Below, piece by piece: positions 1,489-64,000 of a stretch of 64,000 nucleotides of DNA. Both the position numbers and the translations under genes were made by a program. Location: positions 372,001 through 436,000 of IMG/VR virus record IMGVR_UViG_3300029922_000001. The stretch is one strand, 5' to 3'. The notes below the pieces were generated by a model. It saw nothing but the letters and a program-made list of their open reading frames with translations, had not been told where the DNA came from and ran no database searches. How positions within the stretch are numbered: the stretch's first letter is position 1; every line of letters begins with the position of its first letter.

Positions 1489-1524
1489 ATCCCCAATAGG
1501 GGGAATTAAGGTATACTTACGACC

Positions 1525-1854
1525 ATGAATTGGCAAGAAAAATTTCAAAAACTGTCTAGTATAAAAATCATCAATGATAAGTTGTGGTTCTCAATTATGT
1601 GGAGCGATTTCACCAAATGTTGGTATGTATCCAATAACCCTACTATTGATCTATTTGTTGAAATGGATGGTGGCATTGTTACTTTTGCTTGCCACGAAAA
1701 AGCTATTGAAGATGCTGTAAATAAATATTGGGACATTTTCACAACTCATGAAGTCACTGTAGAGTGGCGTAATCCATCAAGTAAGAAAACACACCATATG
1801 GGTGAAATCAACTATATTAATAATGAATTTGTCGTTACAAGAAGAGGTAAATAA
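1525..1854 (+). CDS. hypothetical protein
   Basis: Leaderless start behind class-B promoter. Confidence 0.75.
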   Translation: MNWQEKFQKLSSIKIINDKLWFSIMWSDFTKCWYVSNNPTIDLFVEMDGGIVTFACHEKAIEDAVNKYWDIFTTHEVTVEWRNPSSKKTHHMGEINYINNEFVVTRRGK

Positions 1855-2288
1855 TGCAAGTTGCTCCTGATTATATCGTTATCAAAAGAATGTATGCTGA
1901 AACAATGGCTAATAACATCTATGATAAACTACTTACTCTTACAAATTACTATGGCACTATGGCTGAATGGCTCATACAGGCACGTAAAGGTGGGAAAGAC
2001 TATATTATCTATGTTGCCTTTGATAAGCGTCAGAATCAACCTGTAGGCTGGATTATGTCTACTAATATTCCTGATTCTCATTTGTATAATGGTGAAAATA
2101 AGATTGGAACTTATGTCAATGAATATTATCGAAGACAGGGTATTGGAGCTAAACTAGTAGAAGCAATGAAAAAGGTTAATCAAGAGTTTCTTTTCTGGAG
2201 AGGTAACAATCAAGCTGACAGTTTTTATGGTGCAACTATTCAGAAATCCACTGAATTTAATTATAGTTGGTCTAAGGTGAATGGTTAA
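1854..2288 (+). CDS. GNAT-family acetyltransferase (paralog 2)
   Basis: IGTYVNEYYRRQGIGAKLV; N-terminus PDYIVIKR shared with paralogs 1 and 3. Confidence 0.85.
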   Translation: MQVAPDYIVIKRMYAETMANNIYDKLLTLTNYYGTMAEWLIQARKGGKDYIIYVAFDKRQNQPVGWIMSTNIPDSHLYNGENKIGTYVNEYYRRQGIGAKLVEAMKKVNQEFLFWRGNNQADSFYGATIQKSTEFNYSWSKVNG

Positions 2289-2490
2289 TATGGAAGATTT
2301 TACACCTGATCAAATAAGAAGATTGTCAAACATTATGAGCGATTTGGCTATTTCAGCAAGACAAATGCAAGATGATAGCACCGATGATTTTGCTAAAGGT
2401 TATCAAGCTTGTGCTGATTTTGCGAATAGACGATTGGCAAAACTAAATTCTGAATTAGACAGTCTTAAAGATTTACTTGGCGTCTCATAA
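2281..2490 (+). CDS. hypothetical protein
   Basis: 69-aa ORF, coupled to upstream gene. Confidence 0.6.
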   Translation: MVNMEDFTPDQIRRLSNIMSDLAISARQMQDDSTDDFAKGYQACADFANRRLAKLNSELDSLKDLLGVS

Positions 2491-2526
2491 ATCCCCAACA
2501 TACAAAAAATAGGTATACTATCATTC

Positions 2527-2973
2527 ATGGCACAAAAGGCACCAGATTATATTAAGATTAAACGCATGTACATCAATCAGATTTCACAAAATCGAAAGTT
2601 GGAATATACACTACTCAGTTTGACGCATGGACCCTGTGCATCTATGCATCAATGGTATACCGCTCTAAAGCGAAATAAGAGTGATAATTACATTATCTAT
2701 GTTGCATTTGATACAAGAATTAATGAAGCGGTTGGTTGGTCTATGGTATCAGATGTTTCTGATGACTGGCTTAGTAATGGACAGAAGAAGATTGGAACCT
2801 ATGTTGGTATTCTGTATCGGCGTCAGGGTATTGGTGCAAGACTTGTTAAGGCTGTTAAGCGAATTGATAAGGATTGGGTTTTTTTCAAATACAATCAAGG
2901 TGCTAAGGCTTTTTATGCTGATACCATTAAGAAGTCTACTGATTACAATTACGCTTGGGGAGCAGTGAAATAA
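2527..2973 (+). CDS. GNAT-family acetyltransferase (paralog 3)
   Basis: IGTYVGILYRRQGIGARLV; leaderless behind class-B promoter. Confidence 0.85.
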   Translation: MAQKAPDYIKIKRMYINQISQNRKLEYTLLSLTHGPCASMHQWYTALKRNKSDNYIIYVAFDTRINEAVGWSMVSDVSDDWLSNGQKKIGTYVGILYRRQGIGARLVKAVKRIDKDWVFFKYNQGAKAFYADTIKKSTDYNYAWGAVK

Positions 2974-3007
2974 TCCCCAATGTGGGATTATGAGGTATAC
3001 TAAAAAC

Positions 3008-3307
3008 ATGGCTAAAATTCCACTACAAACATGGCATGAATTTTTCTCAACTGAGTCAGTTGAACGTAAAGAATTTATTAGAGGATTGATTCACAATCGT
3101 ATGGAATATGTTTTTCATCGAATTTTTAAGAATGCTACTTTTTATTTTGCAGATGCTGAAGAAGGTGAAATGGGCACATTTGAAAATTACTTAATGAAAC
3201 ATGATACGCAAATTGATTATATGTATGAACTTTTTTGTCTAGATATTGCTCCAGGTAAATCATTTACTAGCTTTTTTTATGTTTCAGATATTGTGGAGGT
3301 TGAATAA
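3008..3307 (+). CDS. hypothetical protein
   Basis: ATG 6 nt after TATACT; the track start lies inside the promoter. Confidence 0.75.
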   Translation: MAKIPLQTWHEFFSTESVERKEFIRGLIHNRMEYVFHRIFKNATFYFADAEEGEMGTFENYLMKHDTQIDYMYELFCLDIAPGKSFTSFFYVSDIVEVE

Positions 3308-3501
3308 TGATTTGGTTGGTTCTTTTTATAATAGCAACTGCGGTTGGTTTGGGGTTTGGTGGTTGGCTGATATTGCGTGGACATATTTTGATGATGTATC
3401 TATTTAGTAAGATAGGTATACCAAAAACTAAAATACTGATTGCACTCGTATCACTATTATGGGTGTTTGGATATTCCTTACTAGCAACACAGGTAAAATA
3501 A
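3307..3501 (+). CDS. small membrane protein
   Basis: Two hydrophobic segments. Confidence 0.6.
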   Translation: MIWLVLFIIATAVGLGFGGWLILRGHILMMYLFSKIGIPKTKILIALVSLLWVFGYSLLATQVK

Positions 3502-3671
3502 TTATGATTACATTAAAACCAGGCGATGAATATATTATTTTTGGTGTCTTAACTGCTGAAGTGCAAGGTATCCATTCTGTTAGTGATAATTTTACTGAAG
3601 AACAATGGTCTAGAGCAGAAGAATTACGTGCAGAATTGCAATCTATTGTGGATTCTAAGGTAGAATAAGAT

Positions 3672-5551: not shown

Positions 5552-5555
5552 TATC

Positions 5556-16139: not shown

Positions 16140-16203
16140 ATCCCCAATAGGAGAATTAGAGGTATACTCTAGACAACACAATCAGGAAAATCTTCAAGAA
16201 AGC

Positions 16204-16232
16204 TTGACAAAAGACTTCAAGATAGGTATAAT
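16204..16232 (+). promoter_or_regulatory. consensus sigma70-type promoter
   Basis: TTGACA-17-TATAAT; no ORF downstream. Confidence 0.85.
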
Positions 16233-16256
16233 GAATGAGTAAGAAAGAAAGCAAGC

Positions 16257-16520: not shown

Positions 16521-16524
16521 CGCG

Positions 16525-17220: not shown

Positions 17221-17263
17221 AAATCTATCTTCTTAAAATAATCGAAGATTCCTTTTCGATTCC

Positions 17264-17292
17264 TTGACAGAGTATGAAAAACGAGGTATAAT
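17264..17292 (+). promoter_or_regulatory. consensus sigma70-type promoter
   Basis: TTGACA-17-TATAAT, driving the non-coding block up to 17913. Confidence 0.85.
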
Positions 17293-17483
17293 ACATCCAT
17301 AAGCCAACGAGATAAATATGGTCAAGTTCCGAAATGGGAACCGGAAAGGCTAATTGCATTACCTTCATCGGGTACGAGACGGATATATATACTACGTTGA
17401 TGGTAGGATGAAATTTATTTCATGAATTAGGCTGAACTCCTAATGTATATAATAGGAAAGCTGAAATAATCTTTCCTGCGCAC

Positions 17484-17582: not shown

Positions 17583-17591
17583 CGAGAAAAT

Positions 17592-18727: not shown

Positions 18728-19048
18728 ATGAATAGTTATAAATTTATACAAGACTGGATTCAAGACGGATTCAGTATTCGTAAAGGTGTAGTCATTAGAG
18801 GCGATCTGATCGTTACTGAAACTACTGTGAGCATTAAAGGCTCAGAAAGCTTTAAAGATATTCCTATTGATATTCTTGAAGGACATCAAGATGTAGTCTA
18901 TGCTAAGAAACAGAAAATTAAAAAAACGAAAGAAAGAAAACAACAGGTAAAGAAAACCGCTGAAGAATCTGCAAGAATTTCAAGCAGAATTGATTTGTTG
19001 GCTGAAAATCTATTGACACCTACTGAAAATGTGGTACACTCTGCTTAA
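18728..19048 (+). CDS. hypothetical protein
   Basis: ORF track. Confidence 0.65.
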   Translation: MNSYKFIQDWIQDGFSIRKGVVIRGDLIVTETTVSIKGSESFKDIPIDILEGHQDVVYAKKQKIKKTKERKQQVKKTAEESARISSRIDLLAENLLTPTENVVHSA

Positions 19049-19659
19049 TGAAAACCACCAAATATATCCAAGACCTTAGCGAAAAAATTACTAAGAATAA
19101 TAAATCTTTCGCTAAAATGACCCCTGCACAACGTAGAGTTGCTGTAGCTAAGGATACACTTAAAGCTATTCAAGTTGGATTTATAAATCCAATAGTAGGA
19201 TCATATGTCCTTGCGGATTATAATTTTAATAAAGTTCAGTTTGGGGAAGATATGCAAACTATCCTTCTTGAGCTTCCTTACTGTAATTGTTGTGCTAAAG
19301 GTGCTTTATTCGTTGTAAAAGTTGCAAAGTTCAACCATTGTAAAGTGGACCAAAATCTGAAAGAGGATTTTTCAGATAGTGGAATTATTGGGGATGATGG
19401 ACTTGTCTCAAGTTTGGATGGTGTCTTTACTAGGCGACAACTTAATATAATCGAAAATGCTTTTGAAGCTAAATATCTTAACGGTAGTTTTAAAAATAAA
19501 GTATTCTATAAAGCAAGCTTTTTATATGAACATCTTGAACCAAAAGATCGACTTATTGCTATCTGTGAAAACATTATTAAAAATGATGGTGATTTCCATG
19601 TTCGACTTACTGGTAATGCCTTGAAACGATATAATGAGAAACAGCATAATGAAAACTAA
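19048..19659 (+). CDS. hypothetical protein
   Basis: CNCCAKG motif; TTGACA-16-TACACT promoter with ATG 6 nt later. Confidence 0.75.
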   Translation: MKTTKYIQDLSEKITKNNKSFAKMTPAQRRVAVAKDTLKAIQVGFINPIVGSYVLADYNFNKVQFGEDMQTILLELPYCNCCAKGALFVVKVAKFNHCKVDQNLKEDFSDSGIIGDDGLVSSLDGVFTRRQLNIIENAFEAKYLNGSFKNKVFYKASFLYEHLEPKDRLIAICENIIKNDGDFHVRLTGNALKRYNEKQHNEN

Positions 19660-27362: not shown

Positions 27363-27374
27363 TTATAATAGAGT

Positions 27375-27983
27375 ATGAATGATATTGGTATTTTACCTGG
27401 AAGTATTGAAGAAAAATTTTGTCATTATATGACAACTCTTAATGGACGTGTATTTTTAGCTCAATCATTTTGTAAACGAATTAATGAAGCAATGGAGCCT
27501 TATTTAAAAGCATTAGATTGTATATTAGGTAATACTCATTTTGAGTATGCCACTAATGCAGATAGAGGTAAAGTTCTTCCATTAGTAGAAATTGCTTGTT
27601 ATCCCACAGTTAAATTTGATGATAAAGAGAACTGGGTAAAGCTTTGGAATAATCATGGTGTAGAAAGAGTTAAGAATTCTTTATTAAGACAATTATTAGC
27701 TAAGTTTACTGAAGCTGCAAATAAAGCTGGTTATGAAATTAATTTTTCAGATGCGGAAACTATCACTACTGATGAAATTGTCAAAAATTCACAATTAGGA
27801 ATGAGTGGTAAAATCCACATTAATGAAATTACTTGTTTACCTGCTGATTCTCAAGGTGGAATTAAAGAACATTACAATGATGAAACAGGTGAATTAATAT
27901 GGCGTAGTGAAACCCCACGTCCTGCAACATTAGGTCATGTTAATTATTTTGAGGTTGGAATTATTATAGAGGATAAAAAATAA
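27375..27983 (+). CDS. hypothetical protein
   Basis: 202 aa; ATG shortly after TATAAT. Confidence 0.75.
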   Translation: MNDIGILPGSIEEKFCHYMTTLNGRVFLAQSFCKRINEAMEPYLKALDCILGNTHFEYATNADRGKVLPLVEIACYPTVKFDDKENWVKLWNNHGVERVKNSLLRQLLAKFTEAANKAGYEINFSDAETITTDEIVKNSQLGMSGKIHINEITCLPADSQGGIKEHYNDETGELIWRSETPRPATLGHVNYFEVGIIIEDKK

Positions 27984-30685: not shown

Positions 30686-30769
30686 TAAAAATCCCCAACA
30701 CCCTGATTTGAGGTATACTAAACAAAAGGATATATCGAAATTGGGATATAGAAAAGGCGATGACAACAA

Positions 30770-35310: not shown

Positions 35311-35442
35311 GGGAAAGTCTCAGCGTTGAGATCTCCTTTATTTTCCCTATTTCCTTGGATGGTGTTTATCTATACACTAATTAATTGAATTATTCGAACA
35401 ATTCGAAATCCCCAATAGAAGAAATTGAGGTATACTCTGATC

Positions 35443-36678: not shown

Positions 36679-36741
36679 AAAATCCCCAATAAGGAAAATT
36701 GAGGTATACTAAACACAACGAACGGAGAATACGAAAACAAA

Positions 36742-37692
36742 ATGATTCAACAACTAGCATATACAATCGCCCGAAACGGCAACATTACAGTTTATGTGAA
36801 CTTCAATCCTTATCATGTTAACGCTGAAGCGCCAAACTATGAGAAGGTTATGGAAATTCTCAAAAGCGATACCGCGACTAAGATTGATGATCTACTTGTC
36901 GCACTTGACGTAAGAGCGGCTTTGACCAGTCATCTCAGTAACTACATTACCATTGTTGACAATGAGTTGTATTACAAGGATACCGTCATCAACACAACCT
37001 TGGCGGATCGTATTGTAGAATTCTTTCATAAGGGATATGCGATCAGCAACCTTATTAAGTTTTTCGAACGACTTCAAGCTAACCCTTCAGAAAGGGCACA
37101 AATTGAACTTTTCAACTTTCTTGAGAAGAACGACTTGCACATTACCGATGATGGTTACTTCCTTGCATATAAGAAGGTAAGGTCTAATTACACTGACTTG
37201 CGAACCGGTACGTTTGACAATAGTGTAGGTGCAACACCTTGGATGGATCGTAACGAATGCGACGATAATGCAGATGAAGATTGTTCTCATGGACTTCATG
37301 TTGGAACTTACAAGTTTGCTTATGGGTTTAGTAACAATTATGACAATAAGCTTATTCTTGTAAAGGTAGACCCAACGGATTGTGTATCTGTACCTAAGTC
37401 TGATGCAGGAAAGATGCGTGTATGTCAATACTTGGTTATTGCTGATGTCACTGGAAAGGACGGGGTAACTCCTGCTTTTGTTGCAGAATCAACAGTAACA
37501 CAATTGGCTCCAACTCCTACTCCAGTTGTTGCAACTGAAAAGAAGTTGTATCGGGACAAGCAGGGGCACTTTATCTCTAAGGAAAAATATGATGCACTTC
37601 ATGTTGTCACTAACCAATTCCCTAATGGGGTAACACTGACAACAAATAAGTTGCCACAACGTGACAGTAAGGGTAGGTTCCTACCTAAGTAA
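36742..37692 (+). CDS. rIIB: rIIB-like protein
   Basis: ITDDGYFLAYKKV...DNSVG...CS.GLHVG...LVKVDPTDCVSVP...KMRVC; RDSKGRF tail. Confidence 0.85.
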   Translation: MIQQLAYTIARNGNITVYVNFNPYHVNAEAPNYEKVMEILKSDTATKIDDLLVALDVRAALTSHLSNYITIVDNELYYKDTVINTTLADRIVEFFHKGYAISNLIKFFERLQANPSERAQIELFNFLEKNDLHITDDGYFLAYKKVRSNYTDLRTGTFDNSVGATPWMDRNECDDNADEDCSHGLHVGTYKFAYGFSNNYDNKLILVKVDPTDCVSVPKSDAGKMRVCQYLVIADVTGKDGVTPAFVAESTVTQLAPTPTPVVATEKKLYRDKQGHFISKEKYDALHVVTNQFPNGVTLTTNKLPQRDSKGRFLPK

Positions 37693-37770
37693 AAATCCCC
37701 AATGGGGAAAATCAAGGTATACTGGGAATGTAAGAAACATTCTCAGTAACGAGAAGAAAAATAGGAGACT

Positions 37771-39963
37771 TTGAACGGTACTATTAATATGATTCAAAAA
37801 GACACAGCAGGTAACGCAACAGTAGTAGGAATGAACGCGCAATCAGGATTTGCAATCCTTGCATCCGCGAAAGCATTCAAGATTTTGTCATCGGGTATTT
37901 ATAAGAATAAGATTCTTGCCCCAATTCGTGAACTTAGCACTAATGCAATTGACATTCATCGCAAGTTCAATGTTGACCGTCCTTTCGAGGTTCAACTTCC
38001 TAACAATCTTAATCCTCATTTCGTGGTCCGTGACTTTGGACCAGGTTTGTCTAAACTGCAAATTATGGGCGATAAGGAATTGGACATTCAAGGAATTTAC
38101 ACTACGTATTTTCTTTCAACTAAGGAATCTGAGGCAGATCAGATTGGTTGTCTTGGATTGGGTACTAAATCCCCATTTGCTTATGTTACGTCTTTCACTG
38201 TAACCTCTTACTTTGATGGTCTAAAATCAGTGTACGCTATGTACCTTGATGGTGATATGCCAAACGTTAACCTAGTCGGTAGTGAACCTTCTGATGAACC
38301 CACCGGATTGGAGGTAAGCTTTGGAGTCAATGTCTACGACTTTGGTACGTTCCGAAACGAACTACAGAAACTTTATTCCTTCTGGACTGAGGCTGAGCGT
38401 CCTGTAGTAACTGGACAAACGGTATCTTATACCAATTACATGGAAGGTAAAACTAAGGGTAACGGTTGGTTCCTGTCAGATCAGACATACGGTAATCTGT
38501 TTAGTCGTGGTTACTTCCATGTAGTAATGGGGAATATCGCCTATAAGGTGAACTGTTATGATGGTCCTAATAAGGCTTTTGAAGAGATTGCAGAATATAG
38601 CAATTTGATCTTCGAATGCGATCTTGGCGAAGTCAACTTTACTGCATCTCGTGAAGAGTTGGAGTTGGACAACAACACGGTTGCCGCAATTGTCAAGCGA
38701 ATTGAAGACTTTAAGCAGAGCATTGTTGTTTCATTAGAGGAACAGGTTAACAATGCCGGTAGTCTTTGGAAAGCTAGACATCTTGTTGCAGATTTCAAAA
38801 AGTCTCACTCTCTGGTTAAGCGACATGATTTCAAATATCACGGTATGACTCTACTCTGGAATAATCGTGTTAAGTTCACTAAGACACCAATGGTACTTTA
38901 TGTCCGAAATCACGATCAGAAGCTTCACAAGAAACAGGATATTACAAGTTTCTATATCGGAGATTCGTCCCGTAATACAACGTTCTATTTCAATGATCTT
39001 GAAAAGCCACAACATACGCATAGTCGAATGAACTTCCACCTTAGAACTCATAAGACTTCAAATGAAGTAGTATTGATTGACGGGGTAAGCTTCAGGGATG
39101 CTAAAAGAATCTTTGGACTGTCAAAAGATCAGATCACTAGGGTTTCAACGCTTGACATTCCTGTAAGAACTCCACGAATGCGACGGGATAAGAATTTGGA
39201 CTTTGATGATCAAATCGAATTCTGCAATAAGCACATTATGAAGTTAAGCTACTATCGTTGGGACGACTGCGTTCTACCTAAGAGCGAACCGGTTTACTAC
39301 TTTGTTGACCTGAAGGGACAAAAGCCACAATTTGAAGATGAAGAGATCACTAGTTTCGATAACGTAGTGCGATTTATGAGAGAATGCACTAGCTACGATG
39401 TTACAACAGTGTATGGCGTTCGTGGTCCTGCTAAGAAGCTAGTCGAAAATTCAGATGCTTGGGTAAACATTTATGATCTTTTCAAGGTGGAACTAAAGAA
39501 GTATCTTGATAAGTATCCTCTTGCGGAATATGCAAGTAAGGACTATCTCAAGACTAATGTAATTAAAGAATTGTTGAAGATCAAAGAAGTGTTGGCTTTG
39601 AATCCGGTTACTGAGAATGGTGACATATGCAAGAAGATTACAAAGATTGAGGCTGACGTTATCGTTCCTTCAACCTGGGAATGGAAGATGGATTACTACA
39701 CTTTCCAGCGATTGGCTTATAAGATCGGAGTGAGTTTGCCAGAATCACACAATAAGGACACTACAACTCTTTCACAAGATGTTAAAGATATCCGTGTTGA
39801 ATATGCTACACAATTCCCACTAATGCAGCATCTTAGCTATTCAGTTGAGGGTAAGAAGGAATACCTAAGACTTTGGGTAGTCGATCAAGAAGCTAAGGCA
39901 CTTGCAAATACAGTTCAAGAATCAAAACTAGAGGATACCGTTCAAGTCTCACTGACAGTCTAG
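37771..39963 (+). CDS. rIIA: rIIA-like protein (GHKL ATPase N-terminus)
   Basis: FKILSSGIYKNKILAPIRELSTNAID; VRDFGPGL; IGCLGLGTKSPFAY. Confidence 0.85.
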   Translation: MNGTINMIQKDTAGNATVVGMNAQSGFAILASAKAFKILSSGIYKNKILAPIRELSTNAIDIHRKFNVDRPFEVQLPNNLNPHFVVRDFGPGLSKLQIMGDKELDIQGIYTTYFLSTKESEADQIGCLGLGTKSPFAYVTSFTVTSYFDGLKSVYAMYLDGDMPNVNLVGSEPSDEPTGLEVSFGVNVYDFGTFRNELQKLYSFWTEAERPVVTGQTVSYTNYMEGKTKGNGWFLSDQTYGNLFSRGYFHVVMGNIAYKVNCYDGPNKAFEEIAEYSNLIFECDLGEVNFTASREELELDNNTVAAIVKRIEDFKQSIVVSLEEQVNNAGSLWKARHLVADFKKSHSLVKRHDFKYHGMTLLWNNRVKFTKTPMVLYVRNHDQKLHKKQDITSFYIGDSSRNTTFYFNDLEKPQHTHSRMNFHLRTHKTSNEVVLIDGVSFRDAKRIFGLSKDQITRVSTLDIPVRTPRMRRDKNLDFDDQIEFCNKHIMKLSYYRWDDCVLPKSEPVYYFVDLKGQKPQFEDEEITSFDNVVRFMRECTSYDVTTVYGVRGPAKKLVENSDAWVNIYDLFKVELKKYLDKYPLAEYASKDYLKTNVIKELLKIKEVLALNPVTENGDICKKITKIEADVIVPSTWEWKMDYYTFQRLAYKIGVSLPESHNKDTTTLSQDVKDIRVEYATQFPLMQHLSYSVEGKKEYLRLWVVDQEAKALANTVQESKLEDTVQVSLTV

Positions 39964-40527: not shown

Positions 40528-40570
40528 TTTTAAAAATCCCCAATAAAGAATTAAGAGGTATACTGCCAAC

Positions 40571-41275
40571 ATGAAAACACTTAGATCGGTTGCAGCAATT
40601 GAAAAATCGTCCAACTCGAAAATTGGAATTGCATCTACTACTTATGCTTCGCAAGAATCTTGTCCTAAGACTTGTATGTTCTATAATAACGGTTGCTATG
40701 CAGGTTTGGGTCTAACAGGTATTCACACTAAACGATTAAACCGAAGTGGCGTTACTGACATTGTTGAGATTGCTAAGGCAGAAGCTGAAGGAATCCGGTC
40801 TTTGACAGGTTGTTACAATCTAAGAATCCATACGGTTGGGGATTGTAAGACTGATGAAACAGCTAAGATTGTTTCAGATGCGGCAAAGGATTTTATGTCA
40901 AAAGATGGCAAAATCGCTTGGACCTATACTCATGCTCATGATGTTAAACGTGAGTCATGGGGTAGCGTGAGTATCTTACGTAGTTGTGAGACTATCGCGC
41001 AAGTCAAGCAAGCACATAGCGATGATTATGCAAGTGCAATGGTTGTATCTGAGTTTGAATCTGATAAGCCTTATGATATAGGTGAGGGATTCACCGGTAT
41101 CCCTTGTCGCAATCAAGTTAATAAAGAGATTACTTGCACTAAGTGTAAGCTATGCTTTAATGATAAGGTCTTGCACAAGTCCAAAAGAGTCATCTTGTTC
41201 GCTAGTCATGGCACAATGAAGGGTACAGTTAATAAAACACTAAAAGTACTTAATCTCCCAAATGACAAAAACTAA
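40571..41275 (+). CDS. Gp88-like Fe-S/Cys protein
   Basis: SCPKTC...GCYA; LRIHTVGD; WTYT; C-terminal C..C.KC.LC. Confidence 0.65.
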   Translation: MKTLRSVAAIEKSSNSKIGIASTTYASQESCPKTCMFYNNGCYAGLGLTGIHTKRLNRSGVTDIVEIAKAEAEGIRSLTGCYNLRIHTVGDCKTDETAKIVSDAAKDFMSKDGKIAWTYTHAHDVKRESWGSVSILRSCETIAQVKQAHSDDYASAMVVSEFESDKPYDIGEGFTGIPCRNQVNKEITCTKCKLCFNDKVLHKSKRVILFASHGTMKGTVNKTLKVLNLPNDKN

Positions 41276-41311: not shown

Positions 41312-41603
41312 AGCTTTTTATTGAGAACCATCTACTCTATTAGTGTATAGATAAAAGGTTTCCCCGAAAATGGGGAAACCTCCGAAATCCCAGCATTGAT
41401 AAGTCAATTACTCACAGCTAAAGCAGTGGGCTTGTTTTTGGTCGTGATAGGGGTTGCAGTCAGCACCATGACAATATTAGTATTGGGTTGGGTTGTAGGC
41501 ATTGGGGTATTATTATTATTGTTTGCTATGGTTAACTGGTTTGTCAACATCTGTTGTCCACGTAAAATCCCCAATAGGTGAATTGAGGGTATACTAGAAA
41601 CTT

Positions 41604-41676
41604 GTCCCGGTAGCTCAGTGGATAGAGCAACAGCCTTCTAAGCTGTGGGTCGCAGGTTCGAATCCTGTTCGGGACG
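41604..41676 (+). tRNA. trnR: tRNA-Arg(UCU)
   Basis: Complete cloverleaf GTCCCGG...ACAGC-CTTCTAA-GCTGT...GCAGG-TTCGAAT-CCTGT-TCGGGAC-G; CCA not encoded. Confidence 0.95.
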
Positions 41677-41700
41677 CGAGATTTATGGTATAATAACATC

Positions 41701-41943
41701 ATGACAAAAAAAGTATTTGCCTTCGTTATGACTATTAGCATTATTGGTGCTTTGCTATTTGGTTGTAGTTTTGGTACTCAAGATTCCGTTAATGTAACAC
41801 CGATAATTTACACCTTTACCATTGATGGTAGAACCTATCAGTATCAAGATTGCACTTTCTATGAAAGTGGTCTTGCCCAATGTACTGATGATAAAGGTAA
41901 ACAAGTTGATATTAGCGGTAGCTATAAATCAGTGGAAAATTAA
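41701..41943 (+). CDS. small lipoprotein
   Basis: Lipobox LFGC. Confidence 0.7.
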   Translation: MTKKVFAFVMTISIIGALLFGCSFGTQDSVNVTPIIYTFTIDGRTYQYQDCTFYESGLAQCTDDKGKQVDISGSYKSVEN

Positions 41944-42106: not shown

Positions 42107-42140
42107 TCCCCAACGATTGGATTAAAGGTATACTGCACTT

Positions 42141-43247
42141 ATGAGTTCAAGATTCCACGTTGGAACCCTAACCAAAGCAAAACTTAAATCTCCACAGGTA
42201 GTACTACCTGTGAAGCAGAAGAAACTAGCCACCTTTCAAGAACGGGATACAATTCCTTCTACTGGTAATAAGGTAAGTTATCTTAACTCAATTAAGGGTC
42301 AAGAAAATCTAAAGGAGATGTTACAAATTCAAATAGATGCCTATAACAACTCTAAGGGTAGTGTAGGGCACTGGCTATTCACTGGTCCTTCAGGATTGGG
42401 TAAGACAAAGTTTGCTAACGCTTTTGCGGCTGATTTAGGACTGCCATTCTATCCGATTTTAGGTAATCGTATTAAGAAGTGGTCTGAAGTGGTCGCACTG
42501 CTTTCTAGAGTTCAAGAGAATGATATTATCTTCATTGACGAAATTCATGCTCTTAGACCTATGTTCCAAAATAACTTTTATAACATCTTACAGAATTTTA
42601 CTTTTGATGATATCGTTGAAGGTAGTGCTATAACCTATAAACTGCCTAAGTTTAGTTTATGGGGTGCCACTACTCATGTAGGTGATCTAAATGAAGCCTT
42701 AAAGAACCGTTTTACTGACATTGCGGAAATGGTCCCTTACACTCGAAATCAACTTACTAACATTATCGTAGAAACTGCTGCGAGTGAATTCGATGTTAAT
42801 ATTAATAATGAACTGGCTTATAAGATGTCTAATCTAGTGCGTGGCACTCCTAGATACGCTGTAAACATGATTCGGACGTTAGTTAAGGTGTCGAAAGCAT
42901 ATCAAACCGAAATTGATATAAAGGTTCTTACTAAAAGCTTGCAATTGAAGAATTTAGATCCGTTTCTAGGTTTAGATTTTACTGCACGTAAGTATCTCTT
43001 TGCTTTGTATGATAATGGGTCTATGGGAACGGCATCCATTGGTATCCACATTAATGAAGAAGAAAAAACTGTGATTGCATTAGAAAAATTCTTATTCTCT
43101 TATTTTGAAGTACCAGAACTTAACATTAAGGGACCATTGATTGTTAAAGGATTGGGTAAGAAACTTTCCCCTAATGGATTTAAGTACATTGATGGAATTC
43201 GAAAGTTAAAACAGAGTGGGTGGTTTCTAGCTGAGAACTGGGATTAA
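42141..43247 (+). CDS. ruvB: RuvB-like Holliday-junction branch-migration ATPase
   Basis: GQE.LK; GPSGLGKT; IFIDEIH; GATT; LKNRF; RGTPRYA. Confidence 0.85.
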   Translation: MSSRFHVGTLTKAKLKSPQVVLPVKQKKLATFQERDTIPSTGNKVSYLNSIKGQENLKEMLQIQIDAYNNSKGSVGHWLFTGPSGLGKTKFANAFAADLGLPFYPILGNRIKKWSEVVALLSRVQENDIIFIDEIHALRPMFQNNFYNILQNFTFDDIVEGSAITYKLPKFSLWGATTHVGDLNEALKNRFTDIAEMVPYTRNQLTNIIVETAASEFDVNINNELAYKMSNLVRGTPRYAVNMIRTLVKVSKAYQTEIDIKVLTKSLQLKNLDPFLGLDFTARKYLFALYDNGSMGTASIGIHINEEEKTVIALEKFLFSYFEVPELNIKGPLIVKGLGKKLSPNGFKYIDGIRKLKQSGWFLAENWD

Positions 43248-52527: not shown

Positions 52528-52797
52528 ATGAGTAAGCGAACAGAAACCTTTAGCAGAGATTTGGTACTCAAATTGATTAATAATCATTTGAGACAAATTA
52601 AACAATGGAAGTCATTGAGTAGTCTAGAATTAGCTATTAAATGTCGTGAAAACGCAACAGCTTTGATTGAGATGCTAGAGTCAGAAGATTGTGGTTCTTG
52701 GGGTGGACATGATCCAGAAGATCCAAAATGTGGCAAACACGCTGATATTTATTCTCGTTATGAGTGGTTAAGAGATAGACCAAAAAATCCCCAATAG
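52528..52797 (+). CDS. hypothetical protein
   Basis: Leaderless; ends KNPQ*. Confidence 0.7.
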   Translation: MSKRTETFSRDLVLKLINNHLRQIKQWKSLSSLELAIKCRENATALIEMLESEDCGSWGGHDPEDPKCGKHADIYSRYEWLRDRPKNPQ

Positions 52798-52824
52798 AAA
52801 ATTAAGAGGTATACTAGGAGTACA

Positions 52825-53295
52825 ATGAAAACAATTTCACGAAATGCGATTGCTGAAAAGCTAAAGGACACTGCAAAGGGAACACGGATCATCGGAGTGC
52901 AATATACTACCGAACCAAAGGTAAAGAAGTCTTGCCCGTTCGCAAATCTTCAGAAGCATACTCAAAGTACGGTTATGCTTGGTGTTAACTACGCTAACCG
53001 TTTGGCGGCTAAAGGTGAACAACCTGCTGGCGTAGACCCTTACTTTGAGGACATTGACGGTCAAAACTGGCTTGTTCGCCATAAGACCAACGGTACAGAA
53101 TACTTGCGGGTTTCACCAACTGGTAACAACTTTGCAAAGTCATTCTACACTTCTGATGGTGTAGATGTTGACTCAGACTTGGTAAAGGAACATCTTTACG
53201 CTAAGGCTGAAGGGGTACCTGAAGTATTCTTGATCAAACTTGCAAACATTCGTAACATCTCACTCAATGGTGAGCAGTACCAGATTGTAGGTTAA
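52825..53295 (+). CDS. hypothetical phage protein
   Basis: 156 aa; followed by a terminator. Confidence 0.8.
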   Translation: MKTISRNAIAEKLKDTAKGTRIIGVQYTTEPKVKKSCPFANLQKHTQSTVMLGVNYANRLAAKGEQPAGVDPYFEDIDGQNWLVRHKTNGTEYLRVSPTGNNFAKSFYTSDGVDVDSDLVKEHLYAKAEGVPEVFLIKLANIRNISLNGEQYQIVG

Positions 53296-53309
53296 GCCAC
53301 AATCTAACG

Positions 53310-53347
53310 AAATGAGACTGAGGGAATAATCTCTCAGTCTCATTTTT
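53310..53347 (+). terminator. intrinsic terminator
   Basis: AATGAGACTGAG/CTCAGTCTCATT plus T tract. Confidence 0.85.
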
Positions 53348-53420: not shown

Positions 53421-53460
53421 AAATCTCCGACAACATGCTAAAATCTCCGAGAACATGCTA
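53421..53460 (+). repeat. 20-bp tandem repeat
   Basis: AAATCTCCGA(C/G)AACATGCTA x2, abutting a class-C element and a TATAAT. Confidence 0.85.
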
Positions 53461-53469
53461 TAATAAAGT

Positions 53470-53859
53470 ATGGAACTATTTATTTCAATCACAGGTCAAG
53501 CGGCAACAGGTAAGACCACAATAGCTAAAATCATAGAAGATGCTCTACGCGATAAAGGCTTTAAAGTCATTCAGAACGACATAGATTTGACTGGTGATGT
53601 AATTAAACCCGATGGATGGGTAGAACGTAACACAGAAGGAATTAAGGGCAAAGAAACCACTATTAGCATTGATACAGTAGGTGTACGTAGAGGAAGAGAG
53701 AAGGTTACTTGTCCAAAATGCGGATATTGCCCAAAATGCGGTTGGGATACAACAGAAGAAGATCTTTGTTTGTTTTGCGGTGGTGTTCTTGGATCACCTA
53801 AACGCAGTGCTGACATTGGAGTAACCACTGACAAAGAGATTATCTTAGGTATGGGATAA
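53470..53859 (+). CDS. P-loop protein with Zn ribbon
   Basis: ISITGQAATGKTT; CPKC.YCPKC...CLFC. Confidence 0.65.
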   Translation: MELFISITGQAATGKTTIAKIIEDALRDKGFKVIQNDIDLTGDVIKPDGWVERNTEGIKGKETTISIDTVGVRRGREKVTCPKCGYCPKCGWDTTEEDLCLFCGGVLGSPKRSADIGVTTDKEIILGMG

Positions 53860-55775: not shown

Positions 55776-56165
55776 ATGGAAAACTTGACGATTGAACAAC
55801 TTGAAAAGAAACTTGGAATTAGATTCGTAACGGATTGCCATTATTCGATTACAGAAACGCGAGTTTATATGCCAAAGTCTAATGACTATCTACGAATTGT
55901 TATTGATTGGAAATCAAATAAACATTGTACTAATAAATATGTTCATTTTCTTTATGATCTATCTTCTAGTCTTGGACATCATATTCACTTCTTTCGCGCT
56001 CCAAGGGGAAAAAAGTTTTATATAGGACTTGAAGATTTGAAAGAAAATTCAAATAAACATAATAATTGGGAATATATTGGATTTAGCAATTTGAAGTATA
56101 GTGTAGAACTTACCTATATTAGTCGCAAACATTCTACAACAATGTATAAGGAGGAAAGAGAATGA
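55776..56165 (+). CDS. hypothetical protein
   Basis: Leaderless behind class-B promoter. Confidence 0.7.
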   Translation: MENLTIEQLEKKLGIRFVTDCHYSITETRVYMPKSNDYLRIVIDWKSNKHCTNKYVHFLYDLSSSLGHHIHFFRAPRGKKFYIGLEDLKENSNKHNNWEYIGFSNLKYSVELTYISRKHSTTMYKEERE

Positions 56166-58995: not shown

Positions 58996-59028
58996 GAAAG
59001 GGTACCCGATGGTACCCTTTCTCTATTT
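58996..59028 (+). terminator. intrinsic terminator
   Basis: GAAAGGGTACC-CGAT-GGTACCCTTTC. Confidence 0.8.
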
Positions 59029-59924: not shown

Positions 59925-59951
59925 AACCGGAGAGAATCCGGTTTTCTTTTT
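59925..59951 (+). terminator. intrinsic terminator
   Basis: AACCGG-AGAGAAT-CCGGTT plus T tract. Confidence 0.75.
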
Positions 59952-62313: not shown

Positions 62314-62337
62314 AAAAATTAGAGGTATACTCTAAAT

Positions 62338-62571
62338 ATGAACATTCTAAAGAAGATTCTCAAAGCTATTGGATGTAAACAATCTACGCTTTGTAAATTT
62401 GGTTATCATACACTAGCTTGGTATTCAAAAGCTGATTGTGAAATGTATTTCATTCAGAAGCGCAAATTTGGTCCTTTAGTAGAGTGCGGTTGTTGTCGTA
62501 AGATTTTACATATTGAAGAAGTTAACGTTGATGAGGTTGAGTATCTTCATGGATTATATCCAATAAATTAA
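62338..62571 (+). CDS. hypothetical protein
   Basis: Leaderless behind class-B promoter. Confidence 0.65.
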   Translation: MNILKKILKAIGCKQSTLCKFGYHTLAWYSKADCEMYFIQKRKFGPLVECGCCRKILHIEEVNVDEVEYLHGLYPIN

Positions 62572-62611
62572 GAATTATCCCCAATAGGAATTTTAAAGGT
62601 ATACTCTAAAC

Positions 62612-62977
62612 ATGAAAGTTTTAATATCTGATGATGACCAAAATCTTTTAGATAGTATGGTTCGCTATTTAGAGCGTTATGATATCGAAGTACATGGTTT
62701 TCTTTACAATGATCTTGCTATGAATGATCTTGAGGCAGGTTTTACACCTGACTTCATTTTGACAGATTATGACTATGGTTGCGGACGACGAAATGGAGTA
62801 GATTATATTAAAGCACTTAGGTCAAAACATTTTACTGTACCTATCGCTTTAGTTTCAGGTTCAAGTAAACAACAATTAATGAAGGAAATCGAAGGTATTG
62901 ACAATGTTGTTGTAATTGAAAAATCAATGAATTTATGTAAAATGATTTTTAGGTTTCTTAATTTAAATCCCCAATAG
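62612..62977 (+). CDS. stand-alone response-regulator receiver (CheY-like)
   Basis: VLISDDD; ILTD phospho-site; VSG; IEK. Confidence 0.85.
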   Translation: MKVLISDDDQNLLDSMVRYLERYDIEVHGFLYNDLAMNDLEAGFTPDFILTDYDYGCGRRNGVDYIKALRSKHFTVPIALVSGSSKQQLMKEIEGIDNVVVIEKSMNLCKMIFRFLNLNPQ

Positions 62978-63001
62978 GAATTTTAGAGGTATACTCTAAA
63001 C

Positions 63002-63202
63002 ATGATTAAAAAGACTCTTCGACAAGGATTCATTGTTGACAAGCACGGTGTTCAACGATGGTATAAGGATGATTTTATGCATAATCTTAATGGTCCTGCG
63101 GCTGTTTTCCCTGATGGTAGGGTAGCTTACTACATTAACGGTACACGAATTCCACGTAAGACGTTCGGACAAATGCTGGCTAAAGCAAGGAAAAAGAAGT
63201 AA
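63002..63202 (+). CDS. MORN-variant-like small protein
   Basis: RWYK...HNLNGPAAVFPDG..AYYING. Confidence 0.65.
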   Translation: MIKKTLRQGFIVDKHGVQRWYKDDFMHNLNGPAAVFPDGRVAYYINGTRIPRKTFGQMLAKARKKK

Positions 63203-63429
63203 TGCCAGAAACCCCACCGCCAATTACAAGTATGCAACTTCAAGCTTTTTGCTTACTATTTCAACAATCTCTTACTTAATGTATTGGGGAACAAATTCGA
63301 AACAAGATACTTGTTTTCTTGTTCTTACTATTGCATTTTTGGTGTTGGGTCTAAGTGTACTTATGTGCAAATACCTGATACCACCAGACTAGTTTTCCCC
63401 AATAAGAAAATCGAAGGTATACTCTTTTC

Positions 63430-63864
63430 ATGGCTAATTTTCCTACTCTGCAAGACGTGCATTGGGTTTCAATTGAAGAGATTTTAAACTCTTGGCTTTC
63501 AATTGATAGTAAAGCACTTAAAACATCTACGGACATTTCAAAAGAGTTGACCTATAAAGAATGGGAGATACTACTTACAAGAAAACGTGAAGAGTGTGAA
63601 TATGAAGAGATTAGACCTATCATTGAACAAGAGGGGTTTAGAATGCCTTTGGTTTACGAAATTCAAGATCGAACTGGAAAATTCTGTCATTGTCAGGGAC
63701 ATCATAGACTAGCTTGTGCAATAGATTTAGGATATAAATATTTGCCATACGTTCATTATCAATGGGCTGATGGTGGTTGTTGGCACATTGCTGATTTTGA
63801 GTGGGATACATTAATCCATCCTGAAAATCCCCTGCCTACTAATCCAATTTTGACTGATAAATAA
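63430..63864 (+). CDS. ParB/Srx-like paralog D
   Basis: WVSIEEI...QGHHRLACAIDLGYKYLP; tail LIHPENPLPTNP shared with paralog A. Confidence 0.75.
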   Translation: MANFPTLQDVHWVSIEEILNSWLSIDSKALKTSTDISKELTYKEWEILLTRKREECEYEEIRPIIEQEGFRMPLVYEIQDRTGKFCHCQGHHRLACAIDLGYKYLPYVHYQWADGGCWHIADFEWDTLIHPENPLPTNPILTDK

Positions 63865-63901
63865 AAATCCCCAATGGGGAAAACCGAGGTATACTTAGAA
63901 C

Positions 63902-64000
63902 ATGAAAACACTTTCAACACAGACAAGAGATCGAAAAGGACTACTCACTGCTTACGGATTTGTCGATGGTGGCACCGAAACAAGACAAAAGGATAATACA
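63902..64000 (+). CDS. 5' part of a gene running off the window
   Basis: Leaderless ATG behind class-B promoter. Confidence 0.6.
   Translation, partial: MKTLSTQTRDRKGLLTAYGFVDGGTETRQKDNT

What the first reader, a model, noticed from the sequence alone, without database searches (positions are those of the whole stretch)
1500..63905. Near-universal leaderless translation
Seen: for dozens of genes the ATG lies 6-7 nt after TATACT/TATAAT, at the expected +1, with no Shine-Dalgarno. The tRNA-Arg starts 8 nt after its -10, which supports that geometry. A minority (rIIB, rIIA, 33300, 26756, 29403, 26072) have leaders with AGGAG/GGAG. Inference: the host favours leaderless mRNA. The phage may use this to keep translating when canonical initiation is impaired. 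It also makes each cassette autonomous, needing only ~30 bp of regulatory DNA.
Basis: partly seen in the sequence, partly recalled or inferred. Interest (0 to 1): 0.6.

Follow-up and report, generated by a model that had tools for sequence, protein, structure and literature searches.

The report
Leaderless-type gene starts in peat megaphage
In an uncultivated phage of at least 441 kb from peat, about a third of all genes, and four fifths of the transcription-unit heads in this window, start exactly 5-7 bases after a -10 promoter box, which is the sequence signature of leaderless mRNA; related phages keep the same geometry, but no RNA data exist to prove it.

Summary
TATAMT-N6-ATG occurs 65 times in the window against 3.0 expected, and 64 of the 65 are on the + strand. 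"Near-universal" overstates it. Of 151 ORF models in the window, 79 have the geometry and 33 sit against the upstream gene with ordinary Shine-Dalgarno (SD) motifs. Of 115 putative units, 93 are headed by such a start or one with a slightly longer gap of 8-12 nt.

Genome-wide, 183 of 579 ORFs meet a strict test, against 1.3 expected by chance.

Most sites in the window belong to a rigid 33-bp promoter-like motif: TCCCCAA, 13 nt, GGTATACT. It has 92 copies, all in the last 100 kb of the record. The same geometry follows plain TATAAT boxes and canonical TTGACA-N17-TATAAT promoters.

Three points support transcription starting at the A of the ATG:
- The base before the ATG is a pyrimidine in 88% of these genes, against 51% elsewhere.
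- One motif copy drives a tRNA.
- Three related phages keep -10-N5/6-ATG, and one of them has a different upstream element.

Two control phages show none of this. The host clearly uses SD, so "the host favours leaderless mRNA" is not shown. This is a new member of a known kind. It remains untested by RNA data.

The parts
1490..63904 (+). Array of 64 copies of the class I promoter-like motif (T-CCCCAA, 13 nt, GG-TATACT). ATG follows at gap 6 in 49 copies, gap 7 in 3, gap 5 in 1 and gap 9 in 4. Three copies have long leaders, one drives a tRNA and three have no clear ATG-started ORF.
   Evidence: Regex listing. Spacing is fixed at 13 nt in 91 of 92 genome copies. Strand bias is 90:1.
42107..42143 (+). 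Class I motif with its -10 at 42129-42134. Six nt later comes the ATG of a 368-aa RuvB-like AAA ATPase (42141-43247).
   Evidence: The ortholog in relative L140 has the same motif and the same gap.
40537..40573 (+). Class I motif followed after 6 nt by the ATG of the DUF7227 protein (40571-41275).
   Evidence: Pfam covers residues 10-224 against profile positions 6-221 of 223, so this ATG fits the family's N-terminus. The orthologs in L140 (ATG) and L142 (GTG) sit at the same gap.
35409..35445 (+). Class I motif followed after 6 nt by the ATG of a 320-aa ORF (35443-36405). The ORF listing had extended this ORF to an upstream TTG that lies inside the motif.
   Evidence: The TTG of TTGAGGTAT is a mechanical start-call artefact seen at several cassettes.
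41568..41677 (+). Class I motif (-10 at 41590-41595), then 8 nt, then tRNA-Arg(TCT) at 41604-41677.
   Evidence: ARAGORN and Rfam score 69.5 bits; sequence read. A non-coding gene behind the motif argues that the motif is a transcription signal and not a ribosome-binding site.
41689..41943 (+). Plain GGTATAAT box, 6 nt, then the ATG of an 80-aa ORF directly after the tRNA. This copy has no CCCCAA element.
   Evidence: It is an example of the second promoter class.
36683..36744 (+). Class I motif followed by a 31-nt stretch containing GGAG, then the rIIB ATG at 36742.
   Evidence: The same leadered layout is kept in relatives L140 and L142.
37696..37773 (+). Class I motif, a leader of roughly 45 nt, AGGAG, then the rIIA start (TTG at 37771, or the next in-frame ATG).
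   Evidence: In the more distant relative L143, rIIA itself has the -10-N5-ATG layout.
30692..30772 (+). Class I motif followed by a 50-nt leader before the ATG of an RNA ligase (PF09511, 30770-31822).
   Evidence: The orthologous ligase in L140 and L142 starts 6 nt after the motif, so genes switch between the two modes.
52788..52827 (+). Class I motif with a 9-nt gap that begins with AGGAG, then the ATG at 52825. This is one of four gap-9 cases in the window.
   Evidence: The expected leader is 2-3 nt if transcription starts 7 nt after the -10.
19013..19050 (+). Canonical TTGACA, 16 nt, TACACT promoter. Seven nt later comes the ATG of a 203-aa ORF (19048-19659).
   Evidence: It shows the same geometry behind a host-type -35/-10 pair.
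16204..16232 (+). Canonical TTGACA-N17-TATAAT promoter with no ORF downstream.
   Evidence: Rfam finds nothing here. Its product is unknown.
17264..17292 (+). Second canonical TTGACA-N17-TATAAT promoter, about 300 nt upstream of the tRNA-Ser call at 17592-17681.
53459..53472 (+). TATAATAA-type box, 5 nt, then the ATG of a 129-aa ORF. This is the third class, in which the box supplies an in-frame TAA just upstream.
27364..27377 (+). TATAAT, 5 nt, then the ATG of a 202-aa ORF (27375-27983).
1844..1856 (+). Internal cistron: GAGGT, 5 nt, then an ATG at 1854 that overlaps the stop of the upstream gene (1525-1854).
   Evidence: This is the typical SD-led second gene of a unit.
3295..3309 (+). Internal cistron: GGAGGT, 6 nt, then the ATG at 3307.
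56148..56164 (+). Internal cistron: AAGGAGG, 7 nt, then an ATG at 56162 that overlaps the upstream gene by 4 nt.
53309..53346 (+). Strong terminator-like hairpin (17-bp stem followed by a T run).
   Evidence: It is one of only three convincing + strand terminators in 20 kb that hold about 35 class I promoters.
58996..59021 (.). Bidirectional terminator-like hairpin with an 11-bp stem.
59925..59943 (.). Terminator-like hairpin with a 7-bp stem followed by a T run.

Best explanation
**Shown.** The window is the right arm of a phage of at least 441 kb. Its genes are arranged in very short transcription units.

**Inferred: transcription.** Each unit begins with a sigma-70-family-type promoter. The -10 box (TATACT or TATAAT, usually preceded by GG) lies 5-7 nt, mostly exactly 6 nt, before the start codon. 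RNA polymerase would therefore start at the A of the ATG.

**Inferred: translation.** The first gene of each unit would be made from a leaderless mRNA, or one with a leader of at most 3 nt, whose 5'-terminal AUG is bound directly by the ribosome. Following genes in a unit abut or overlap the preceding stop and use ordinary SD pairing.

**Shown and inferred: the main promoter class.** It has a fixed upstream element, TCCCCAA at about -34 to -28, in place of a -35 box. Canonical TTGACA promoters also exist in the same genome, and a relative has replaced the upstream element with a different one. The element is therefore probably read by a phage-specified factor, such as one of the two phage sigma-like proteins or an activator. 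This last step is inference.

**Shown and inferred: read-through.** Terminators are rare, so genes are probably also carried on read-through transcripts.
For: 1. **Geometry far above chance.** 65 sites in the window against 3.0 expected. Genome-wide, 183 of 579 ORFs pass the strict test against 1.3 expected. Of 92 class I motifs, 69 have ATG at gap 6.
2. **Spacer sequence varies but its length does not**.
3. **The base before the ATG is a pyrimidine in 205 of 234 such genes, against 161 of 317 others.** Fisher p = 1e-20; 99% at gap 5 and 91% at gap 6. This matches the pyrimidine(-1)/purine(+1) start-site preference of bacterial RNA polymerase, which I state from general knowledge.
4. **No SD in the interval.** Only 2 of 124 such genes that lack the GG have an SD 4-mer at spacing 4-11. 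Genes without the geometry show a clear SD peak at -14 to -8.
5. **The same motif drives tRNA-Arg and precedes long SD-bearing leaders.** This includes rIIA, rIIB and an RNA ligase, so the motif is a transcription signal.
6. **The same geometry follows canonical TTGACA-N17-TATAAT promoters**, for example before the RecD2-like helicase and the ORF at 19048.
7. **Start codons are 94% ATG**, with a few GTG at the same gap.
8. **No gaps of 10-18 nt occur behind class I motifs**. This resembles the bimodal leader lengths measured in Lactococcus cremoris (PMC10986495).
9. **Relatives keep the geometry.**
   - Relatives with 57% and 51% rIIA identity keep the motif and the 6-nt gap.
   - A 34% relative has TTCACAGCAAA in place of TCCCCAA but keeps GGTATAAT-N5-ATG.
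   - The base at -1 is a pyrimidine in 32 of the 33 such starts in the relatives. Their gene starts were called by an independent pipeline.
10. **Controls are negative.** A T4-like phage has 0 of 20 such starts and a distant rIIA-bearing contig has 0 of 34.
11. **No phage RNA polymerase was detected, but two sigma-like genes are present**.
12. **The same signature is read as leaderless in bacteria.** This holds for Deinococcus, other bacteria and Thermus phage phiYS40 (PMC12340547, PMC3160421, PMC3594737).
Against: - **No transcript 5' end has been seen.** No RNA run holds this phage, and the contigs laid on it cannot show starts.
- **Nothing identifies the factor that reads the TCCCCAA element.** If a non-sigma-70-type enzyme reads class I, the start site could lie elsewhere.
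- **The invariant AGG before TATACT would be an SD-like GAGGT about 11 nt from the ATG in read-through transcripts.** Terminators are few, so internal initiation may supply part or most of the protein.
- **The host is unknown.** Its capacity for leaderless translation therefore cannot be judged.
- **A phage-encoded IF3 is, on E. coli precedent, unfavourable to leaderless initiation.**
Confidence: 0.72

Rival explanations
1. The promoters and start sites are as proposed, but the leaderless transcripts contribute little protein. Most translation would come from read-through polycistronic mRNAs. In these, each gene is an internal cistron served by the GAGGT inside the promoter as a distant SD, or by A-rich unstructured RNA. 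On this reading the tight geometry mainly reflects genome compaction.
For: - Only three convincing + strand terminators lie among about 35 promoters in 20 kb.
- The AGG before TATACT is 98-100% conserved.
- Upstream stop codons lie within a few nt of the motif.
- The phage clearly uses SD for other genes.
Against: - GAGG at -16 lies outside the -14 to -8 peak of this phage's own SD sites.
- The GG also precedes the -10 of promoters that drive RNA genes or lie before long leaders.
- 124 genes with the geometry have no GG, and 122 of those have no SD 4-mer either.
- Compaction alone predicts short but variable gaps. It does not predict a fixed 6 nt with a pyrimidine at -1.
Confidence: 0.15
2. 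The conserved block is not a -35/-10 promoter. Transcription would start upstream, with the CCCCAA part as the true promoter core for a phage factor. GAGGTATACT would then be a conserved 5'-UTR translation-initiation region.
For: - The upstream element is unlike any known -35.
- The block contains an SD-like GAGGT.
- The whole block is conserved as one unit in two relatives.
Against: - The block also precedes a tRNA and genes that have their own proper SD 20-60 nt further on.
- TATACT keeps the invariant T, A and final T of -10 boxes.
- Relative L143 has replaced the upstream element yet keeps GGTATAAT at 5 nt from the ATG.
- Plain TATAAT and canonical TTGACA promoters show the same gap.
- The pyrimidine at -1 has no role in an SD model.
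Confidence: 0.07
3. The fixed gap is inherited and not selected. Cassettes made of promoter plus ATG would spread by duplication and recombination between repeated promoters, as with PeSL cassettes of T4-like phages, and would carry the spacing along passively.
For: - Some neighbouring cassettes have identical upstream 45-mers, for example at 45526 and 45787.
- Spacers share a loose CTRATC consensus.
- The ORFs between motifs are unrelated ORFans.
Against: - Many spacers differ at most positions while the length stays at 6.
- Unrelated promoter classes on both strands share the geometry.
- A relative with a different upstream element and a 5-nt gap still places the ATG at the expected +1 with a pyrimidine at -1.
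- Orthologous genes switch between leadered and leaderless layouts.
Confidence: 0.06

Closest known systems
TA-led (leaderless) genes of bacteria: a -10 box adjacent to the ORF in Deinococcus-Thermus, Actinobacteria and some Firmicutes (PMC12340547, PMC3160421, PMC10986495)
   Same: - A TANNNT box lies about 6-7 bp before the start codon in about a third of genes.
- A GGAG-type motif serves the rest.
- The commonest Deinococcus form, TACACT, resembles the TATACT seen here.
- Leader lengths are bimodal.
   Different: - This is a phage of 33% GC, not a high-GC bacterium.
- The -10 is near-consensus and is embedded in a long phage-specific motif.
- The share reaches 48% in one genome arm but about 6% in the structural block.
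- No transcript data exist here.
Leaderless middle and late transcripts of Thermus phage phiYS40 (and P23-45), as summarised in PMC3594737
   Same: A large phage makes many of its mRNAs without leaders from -10-type promoters that lack a normal -35.
   Different: - The Thermus host is itself rich in leaderless genes, whereas the host here is unknown and evidently reads SD.
- phiYS40 infection is reported to raise IF2 and lower IF3, whereas this phage carries its own IF3 gene.
- What I say of P23-45 comes from memory, not from a paper held here.
PeSL cassettes (promoter-early stem-loop) in the hyperplastic regions of T4-like phages (PMC2839356, PMC4122927)
   Same: A conserved intergenic promoter motif of about 35 bp is repeated 50-100 times. 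It sits immediately upstream of small ORFans clustered in one genome region, so each ORF is a self-contained unit.
   Different: - PeSLs have the sigma-70 consensus -35 and a stem-loop terminator, and they feed leadered, SD-bearing genes.
- Here the -35 is replaced by TCCCCAA.
- Only 12-17 of 91 copies can form the CCCC/GGGG hairpin.
- The ATG sits at +1.
- Recombination between copies could not be tested.
MotA/AsiA-dependent middle promoters of phage T4 (from general knowledge)
   Same: A host-type -10 is combined with a phage-specific box centred near -30 that replaces the -35 element.
   Different: - No MotA or AsiA homolog was found, although the Pfam controls for these families rang nowhere.
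- T4 middle genes have leaders with SD.
Jumbo phages phiKZ and AR9
   Same: They are very large phages with mapped promoters.
   Different: Measured 5' UTRs are 31-40 nt in phiKZ, with no leaderless transcript found, and 26-491 nt in AR9 (PMC8244752, PMC5312081). Both use their own multisubunit RNA polymerases, and none was detected here.

Membership tests
Leaderless (TA-led) genes as defined by Zheng et al. 2011 and Zhong et al. 2025 | A TANNNT -10-like box whose last base lies about 5-7 nt before the start codon, at a frequency far above chance | tested here: met
   65 against 3.0 in the window, and 183 of 579 ORFs against 1.3 expected.
Leaderless (TA-led) genes as defined by Zheng et al. 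2011 and Zhong et al. 2025 | No Shine-Dalgarno motif between the promoter and the start codon | tested here: met
   2 of 124 genes. Caveat: class I copies carry AGGT immediately upstream of the -10.
Leaderless (TA-led) genes as defined by Zheng et al. 2011 and Zhong et al. 2025 | The primary transcript 5' end lies at, or within a few nt of, the start codon | not testable with these tools
   No RNA run holds the phage. Indirect support only: pyrimidine at -1 and A at +1.
Leaderless (TA-led) genes as defined by Zheng et al. 2011 and Zhong et al. 2025 | The start codon is AUG, rarely GUG | tested here: met
   234 ATG, 10 TTG and 5 GTG among loosely called cases. GTG occurs at gap 6 in a few copies.
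Leaderless (TA-led) genes as defined by Zheng et al. 2011 and Zhong et al. 2025 | Protein is made from the 5'-terminal AUG | not testable with these tools
   This needs ribosome profiling, N-terminal proteomics or reporters.
PeSL cassettes of T4-like phages | A conserved composite intergenic motif repeated many times before ORFans in a plastic genome region | tested here: met
   92 copies lie in the last 100 kb, with more on a 78-kb contig that overlaps the record's end.
PeSL cassettes of T4-like phages | A sigma-70 consensus -35 and -10 | tested here: not met
   The -10 is present, but the -35 position holds TCCCCAA. The sigma-70 scan does not pick these sites.
PeSL cassettes of T4-like phages | A stable stem-loop that terminates upstream transcription | tested here: not met
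   12 copies have a GGGG arm and 5 a GGG arm, out of 91. Median folding energy is -0.8 kcal/mol.
PeSL cassettes of T4-like phages | Insertions and deletions between related phages are bounded by the motifs | tested here: inconclusive
   Relatives L140 and L142 are syntenic but have different ORF content between motifs. No breakpoint analysis was done. The contig joints are repeat artefacts.
T4 MotA-type sigma appropriation | MotA and AsiA proteins are present | tested here: inconclusive
   No hit to PF09158 or PF09010, but these families rang in no control genome either.

The most novel reading that the evidence does not exclude
This clade of very large phages may run a private expression channel. 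A phage-specified factor would read a lineage-specific box near -30, so that only phage promoters fire. Those promoters would emit leaderless mRNAs. The phage's own IF3 would be adapted to tolerate or favour 5'-terminal AUGs while SD-dependent host translation is suppressed. The leaderless layout would then be a takeover device and not a reflection of host habits.
Probability: 0.12. Interest if true: 0.8.

Novelty: new member of a known kind. Interest (0 to 1): 0.52.

Why it matters
- **Scale.** If transcript mapping confirms it, this would be by far the largest set of leaderless genes described in a phage: about 180-250 in one genome. It occurs in a low-GC lineage whose host reads SD, and it is conserved across related uncultivated phages.
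- **Gene calling.** Mechanical or RBS-based callers mis-start these genes. Several ORFs in the window were extended to a TTG inside the promoter.
- **A compact natural expression unit.** The cassette is only about 36-40 bp and combines promoter and translation start.
- **A testable question.** It sets up an experiment on how a phage-encoded IF3 treats 5'-terminal AUGs.

Tried and rejected
**RNA evidence**
- No run on record as RNA holds the phage.
- Laying Logan contigs of four peat runs showed the same phage with no informative variation. The 'joints' fall between copies of the repeated promoter, have short sides and are repeat artefacts.

**Relatives by DNA or single-protein pattern scans**
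- Nothing was found in INPHARED.
- Nothing was found in IMG/VR with the RuvB-like protein or TerL.
- The exact class I pattern has no hit in IMG/VR outside the own record.
- In JGI metagenomes it occurs only in the own contig, in other contigs of the same or sister peat metagenomes (Ga0302280, Ga0302274, Ga0302281), and as four single chance-level matches.
- Relatives were reached only through the rIIA word search.

**Host identification**
- The closest bacterial IF3 proteins are about 40% identical and come from mixed phyla.
- The nearest DnaK atlas clusters are mostly Bacillota, and the best PDB match for IF3 looked to me like Geobacillus IF3 (identified by eye, not by a tool). These are weak leads only.
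- Cluster look-up gave no names.

**Phage RNA polymerase and T4-type factors**
- No RNA polymerase was found: PF00562, PF00623 and PF00940 gave no hit, and four giant ORFs gave no polymerase domain.
- No MotA or AsiA was found.

**Other checks**
- The hairpin-promoter or terminator idea for CCCC...GGGG was rejected, because only a minority of copies can pair.
- TAG recoding was rejected despite two tRNA(CUA) genes. TAG makes up 10% of stops, and in-frame continuations are no commoner than for TAA.
- The ARAGORN tmRNA call was not confirmed by Rfam.
- My loose count of 249 of 579 genes includes internal chance hits in long ORFs such as RNR and GyrA. The strict count of 183 is the safer figure.
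- Closure of the genome through the 78-kb contig could not be tested because that record is not held.

Full report
**What the window is.** The 64-kb window is bases 372,001-436,000 of a 441,498-bp virus record. Its GC content is 32-38%. The record is found in many peat metagenomes, and none of the runs that hold it is RNA. No cultured phage is close: rIIA and TerL are at most 27-35% identical to anything in INPHARED. Almost all genes in the window are small + strand ORFs without family assignment. The exceptions are two RNA ligases, rIIA and rIIB, a RuvB-like ATPase, DUF7227, a phosphoesterase and an RlaP-like protein.

**Checking the observation.** Printing the 45 nt before each long + strand ORF showed one motif repeated again and again. 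The pattern TATAMT-N6-ATG occurs 65 times in the window, 64 of them on the + strand. Dinucleotide-preserving shuffles give 3.0 +/- 1.5. In the whole record, 107 of 440 TATACT sites have ATG at a gap of exactly 6, and TATAAT sites peak at gaps 5 and 6. Scrambled hexamers show no peak. The tRNA-Arg starts 8 nt after its TATACT, and the listed exceptions do have GGAG or AGGAG leaders.

**Anatomy of the main motif.** The main motif, which I call class I, reads: A-rich, T, CCCCAA, Y, A, about 4 purine-rich nt, AATT, n, G, AGG, TATACT.
- The distance from CCCCAA to GGTATAMT is 13 nt in 91 copies, 12 nt in one and 14 nt in none.
- There are 92 copies in the record, all between 341 and 441 kb, with a strand ratio of 90:1. 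Sixty-four lie in the window.
- Behind the 92 copies, ATG follows at gap 6 in 69, at gap 5 or 7 in 5, and at gap 9 in 5.
- Six copies have leaders of 19-65 nt that mostly carry SD-like motifs. One drives the tRNA and a few have no ORF.
- No copy has a gap of 10-18 nt.

**Other promoter classes show the same geometry.**
- GGTATAAT-N6-ATG occurs 54 times on both strands.
- TTATAATAA with ATG 5 nt after TATAAT occurs 40 times.
- A handful of canonical TTGACA-N17-TATAAT promoters also exist. Some lie upstream of tRNA clusters or have no ORF behind them. Others sit 6-7 nt before an ATG, for example the RecD2-like helicase and the ORF at window 19048.

**How common it is.**
- A loose test (any 5-of-6 -10-like box at gap 5-7 before any start in the first 40% of an ORF) flags 249 of 579 ORFs. 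It includes internal chance hits in long genes.
- A strict test (exact TATAAT or TATACT, ATG within 25 codons of the ORF's first start) gives 183 of 579, against 1.3 expected from internal ATGs.
- By the strict test the share is 48% in the 340-441 kb arm and 23% elsewhere. It is about 6% in the structural block at 60-160 kb.
- In the window, 151 ORF models split into 79 with gap 5-7, 14 with gap 8-12, 33 SD-led and 25 unclassified.
- SD-led genes abut or overlap the upstream gene (median distance 2 nt). The promoter-adjacent genes follow a median gap of 36 nt, which is just the promoter.
- Grouped into 115 putative units, 93 are headed by a promoter-adjacent start. "Near-universal" is therefore true of unit heads, not of genes.

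**Is it a promoter with +1 on the ATG?** Several independent features of the sequence say yes.
- The base before the ATG is a pyrimidine in 205 of 234 such genes against 161 of 317 others (p = 1e-20). The figures are 99% at gap 5 and 91% at gap 6, with C at 54% in a genome with little C. This is the known pyrimidine(-1)/purine(+1) preference of bacterial RNA polymerase start sites, which I state from general knowledge.
- Genes with the geometry but without the GG have an SD-like 4-mer at working distance in only 2 of 124 cases. Genes without the geometry show a clear SD peak at -14 to -8. The host ribosome therefore uses SD, and the promoter-adjacent genes do not.
- The same motif stands before a tRNA and before long leaders with their own SD. 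It is therefore not a ribosome-binding site.
- The GG before the -10 also occurs in promoters that drive RNA genes. It is therefore better read as a promoter element than as an SD.
- No T7-like or multisubunit RNA polymerase was detected, while two sigma-like genes are present. That favours a sigma-70-family holoenzyme, which starts about 7 nt after the -10.

**Relatives and controls.**
- The rIIA word search found relatives. Their contigs were fetched with independently called genes.
- L140 (rIIA 57% identical, GC 35%) and L142 (51%, GC 46.5%) are syntenic with window 29-44 kb. They carry the same class I motif with the same 6-nt gap: 18 of 35 and 3 of 14 called starts. One of these is a GTG start for the DUF7227 ortholog.
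- L143 (34%, GC 43%) has a different upstream element, TTCACAG(C/T)AAA. It is followed by GGTATAAT and then 5 nt to the ATG at 12 of 35 called starts, and its rIIA is one of them.
- The base at -1 is a pyrimidine in 32 of these 33 starts.
- The PF09511 RNA ligase is promoter-adjacent in L140 and L142 but has a 50-nt leader in the window. Genes therefore move between the two modes.
- Two controls show none of this. The rIIA neighbourhood of T4-like Salmonella phage S16 (GC 36.5%) has 0 of 20 such starts, 14 of them with SD. A distant rIIA-bearing contig has 0 of 34.
- The -10-to-ATG geometry is thus conserved in a clade while the upstream box changes. This is what selection on a leaderless start would produce, and it suggests the upstream box is read by a phage-specified factor.

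**What remains open.**
- No 5' end has been observed.
- Terminators are scarce: three convincing + strand ones among about 35 promoters in 20 kb. Most genes must therefore also be present on read-through transcripts. There, the GAGGT inside the motif would lie about 11 nt from the ATG, beyond this phage's usual SD spacing but not impossibly far. How much protein comes from each route cannot be told from sequence.
- The host is unknown. The leads to Bacillota from DnaK and IF3 are weak.

**Comparison with known systems.** The signature is the one used to define leaderless genes in bacteria: TANNNT about 6-7 bp before the ORF in a third of Deinococcus genes (PMC12340547). Typical shares are 39% in Deinococcus-Thermus, 19% in Actinobacteria and 4% in Firmicutes (PMC3160421). 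Low-GC Lactococcus cremoris reaches about 13%, with leaders either under 5 nt or around 40 nt (PMC10986495). Among phages, Thermus phage phiYS40 makes most middle and late mRNAs leaderless and is reported to shift the IF2/IF3 balance (PMC3594737). phiKZ has no leaderless transcripts and AR9 has UTRs of 26-491 nt (PMC8244752, PMC5312081). The dense array of repeated promoters before ORFans resembles PeSL cassettes of T4-like phages (PMC2839356, PMC4122927). However, the sigma-70 -35 box and the stem-loop that define PeSLs are not met here.

**Verdict.** The leaderless reading is the best explanation, at about 0.7. The claim about host preference is not shown. It is a new member of a known kind, made more interesting by its scale, its conservation in a clade of uncultivated large phages, the lineage-specific upstream box and the phage's own IF3.

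Noticed in passing
Outside the window: genome 254,486-255,016 (-), which is L012:1495-2025:-: The phage encodes a full-length IF3 of 176 aa with both domains (IF3_N 83 bits, IF3_C 69 bits). It is about 40% identical to bacterial IF3 proteins of mixed phyla. Its own start lies 13 nt after a GGTATAAT box.
   Followed up: partly
Outside the window: genome about 59.3-59.9 kb (+), L010:1081-1686, and about 229.4-230.0 kb (-), L009:1180-1761: Two sigma-like genes are present. One has an ECF-like region 4 and the other has regions 2 and 4. They are candidates for reading the phage-specific promoter classes. No phage RNA polymerase was detected.
   Followed up: partly
End of the record: genome 441,372-441,498, compared with L123 and L127: The last 127 nt of the record are identical to the first 127 nt of a 78,352-bp contig of the same metagenome (Ga0302280_1000099) and of a 1-kb contig. 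The 78-kb contig carries many more class I cassettes. The genome therefore probably continues and may be about 520 kb, despite the '100% complete' estimate.
   Followed up: partly
Outside the window: genome 172,128-172,200 (+) and 353,602-353,673 (+): Two tRNA genes with anticodon CTA (amber suppressors) are confirmed as tRNAs by Rfam. There is no sign of TAG recoding: TAG makes up 10% of stops and ORF coverage is 92% under the standard code.
   Followed up: yes
Outside the window: genome 293,574-293,927 (+): ARAGORN calls a tmRNA with an atypical tag, 18 nt after a canonical TTGACT-N17-TATAAT promoter. Rfam does not confirm a tmRNA there, so the transcript is of unknown nature.
   Followed up: partly
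Window 16,140-17,950: A 1.8-kb stretch has one class I promoter, two canonical strong promoters and no convincing + strand ORF. A tRNA-like T-arm remnant (about 17,550-17,580) lies just before a weak tRNA-Ser call with anticodon ACT (33.5 bits). A 231-aa ORF on the - strand has no family. These may be non-coding RNAs; Rfam finds nothing else.
   Followed up: partly
Window 13970-14992, 30770-31822 and 43528-44232; outside the window at genome 14,878-16,542 and L012:912-1472:-: There is a rich set of RNA-repair-type genes: two RNA ligases, an RlaP-like nucleotidyltransferase and a Ro60/TROVE protein. A Tpt1/KptA-like protein, identified by eye only, lies next to IF3 and a tRNA cluster.
   Followed up: no
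Outside the window: genome 49,528-53,163, 80,179-85,788 and 188,097-189,935: Intein or LAGLIDADG insertions occur in the ribonucleotide reductase large subunit, in a 1,869-aa protein and in a PhoH-like protein. Several TerL relatives also carry LAGLIDADG domains.
   Followed up: no
Outside the window: genome 194,723-199,068 and 202,603-204,387: The phage carries its own GyrB, GyrA and a DnaK (Hsp70, 583 bits). The nearest DnaK atlas clusters are mostly Bacillota.
   Followed up: partly
Window 35425, 36412, 47043, 48765, 56550, 59526 and others: Mechanical ORF calling starts these genes at a TTG that is part of the promoter motif (TTGAGGTAT). The likely start is the ATG 18 nt downstream. Automatic annotation of this phage will tend to mis-start such genes.
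   Followed up: yes
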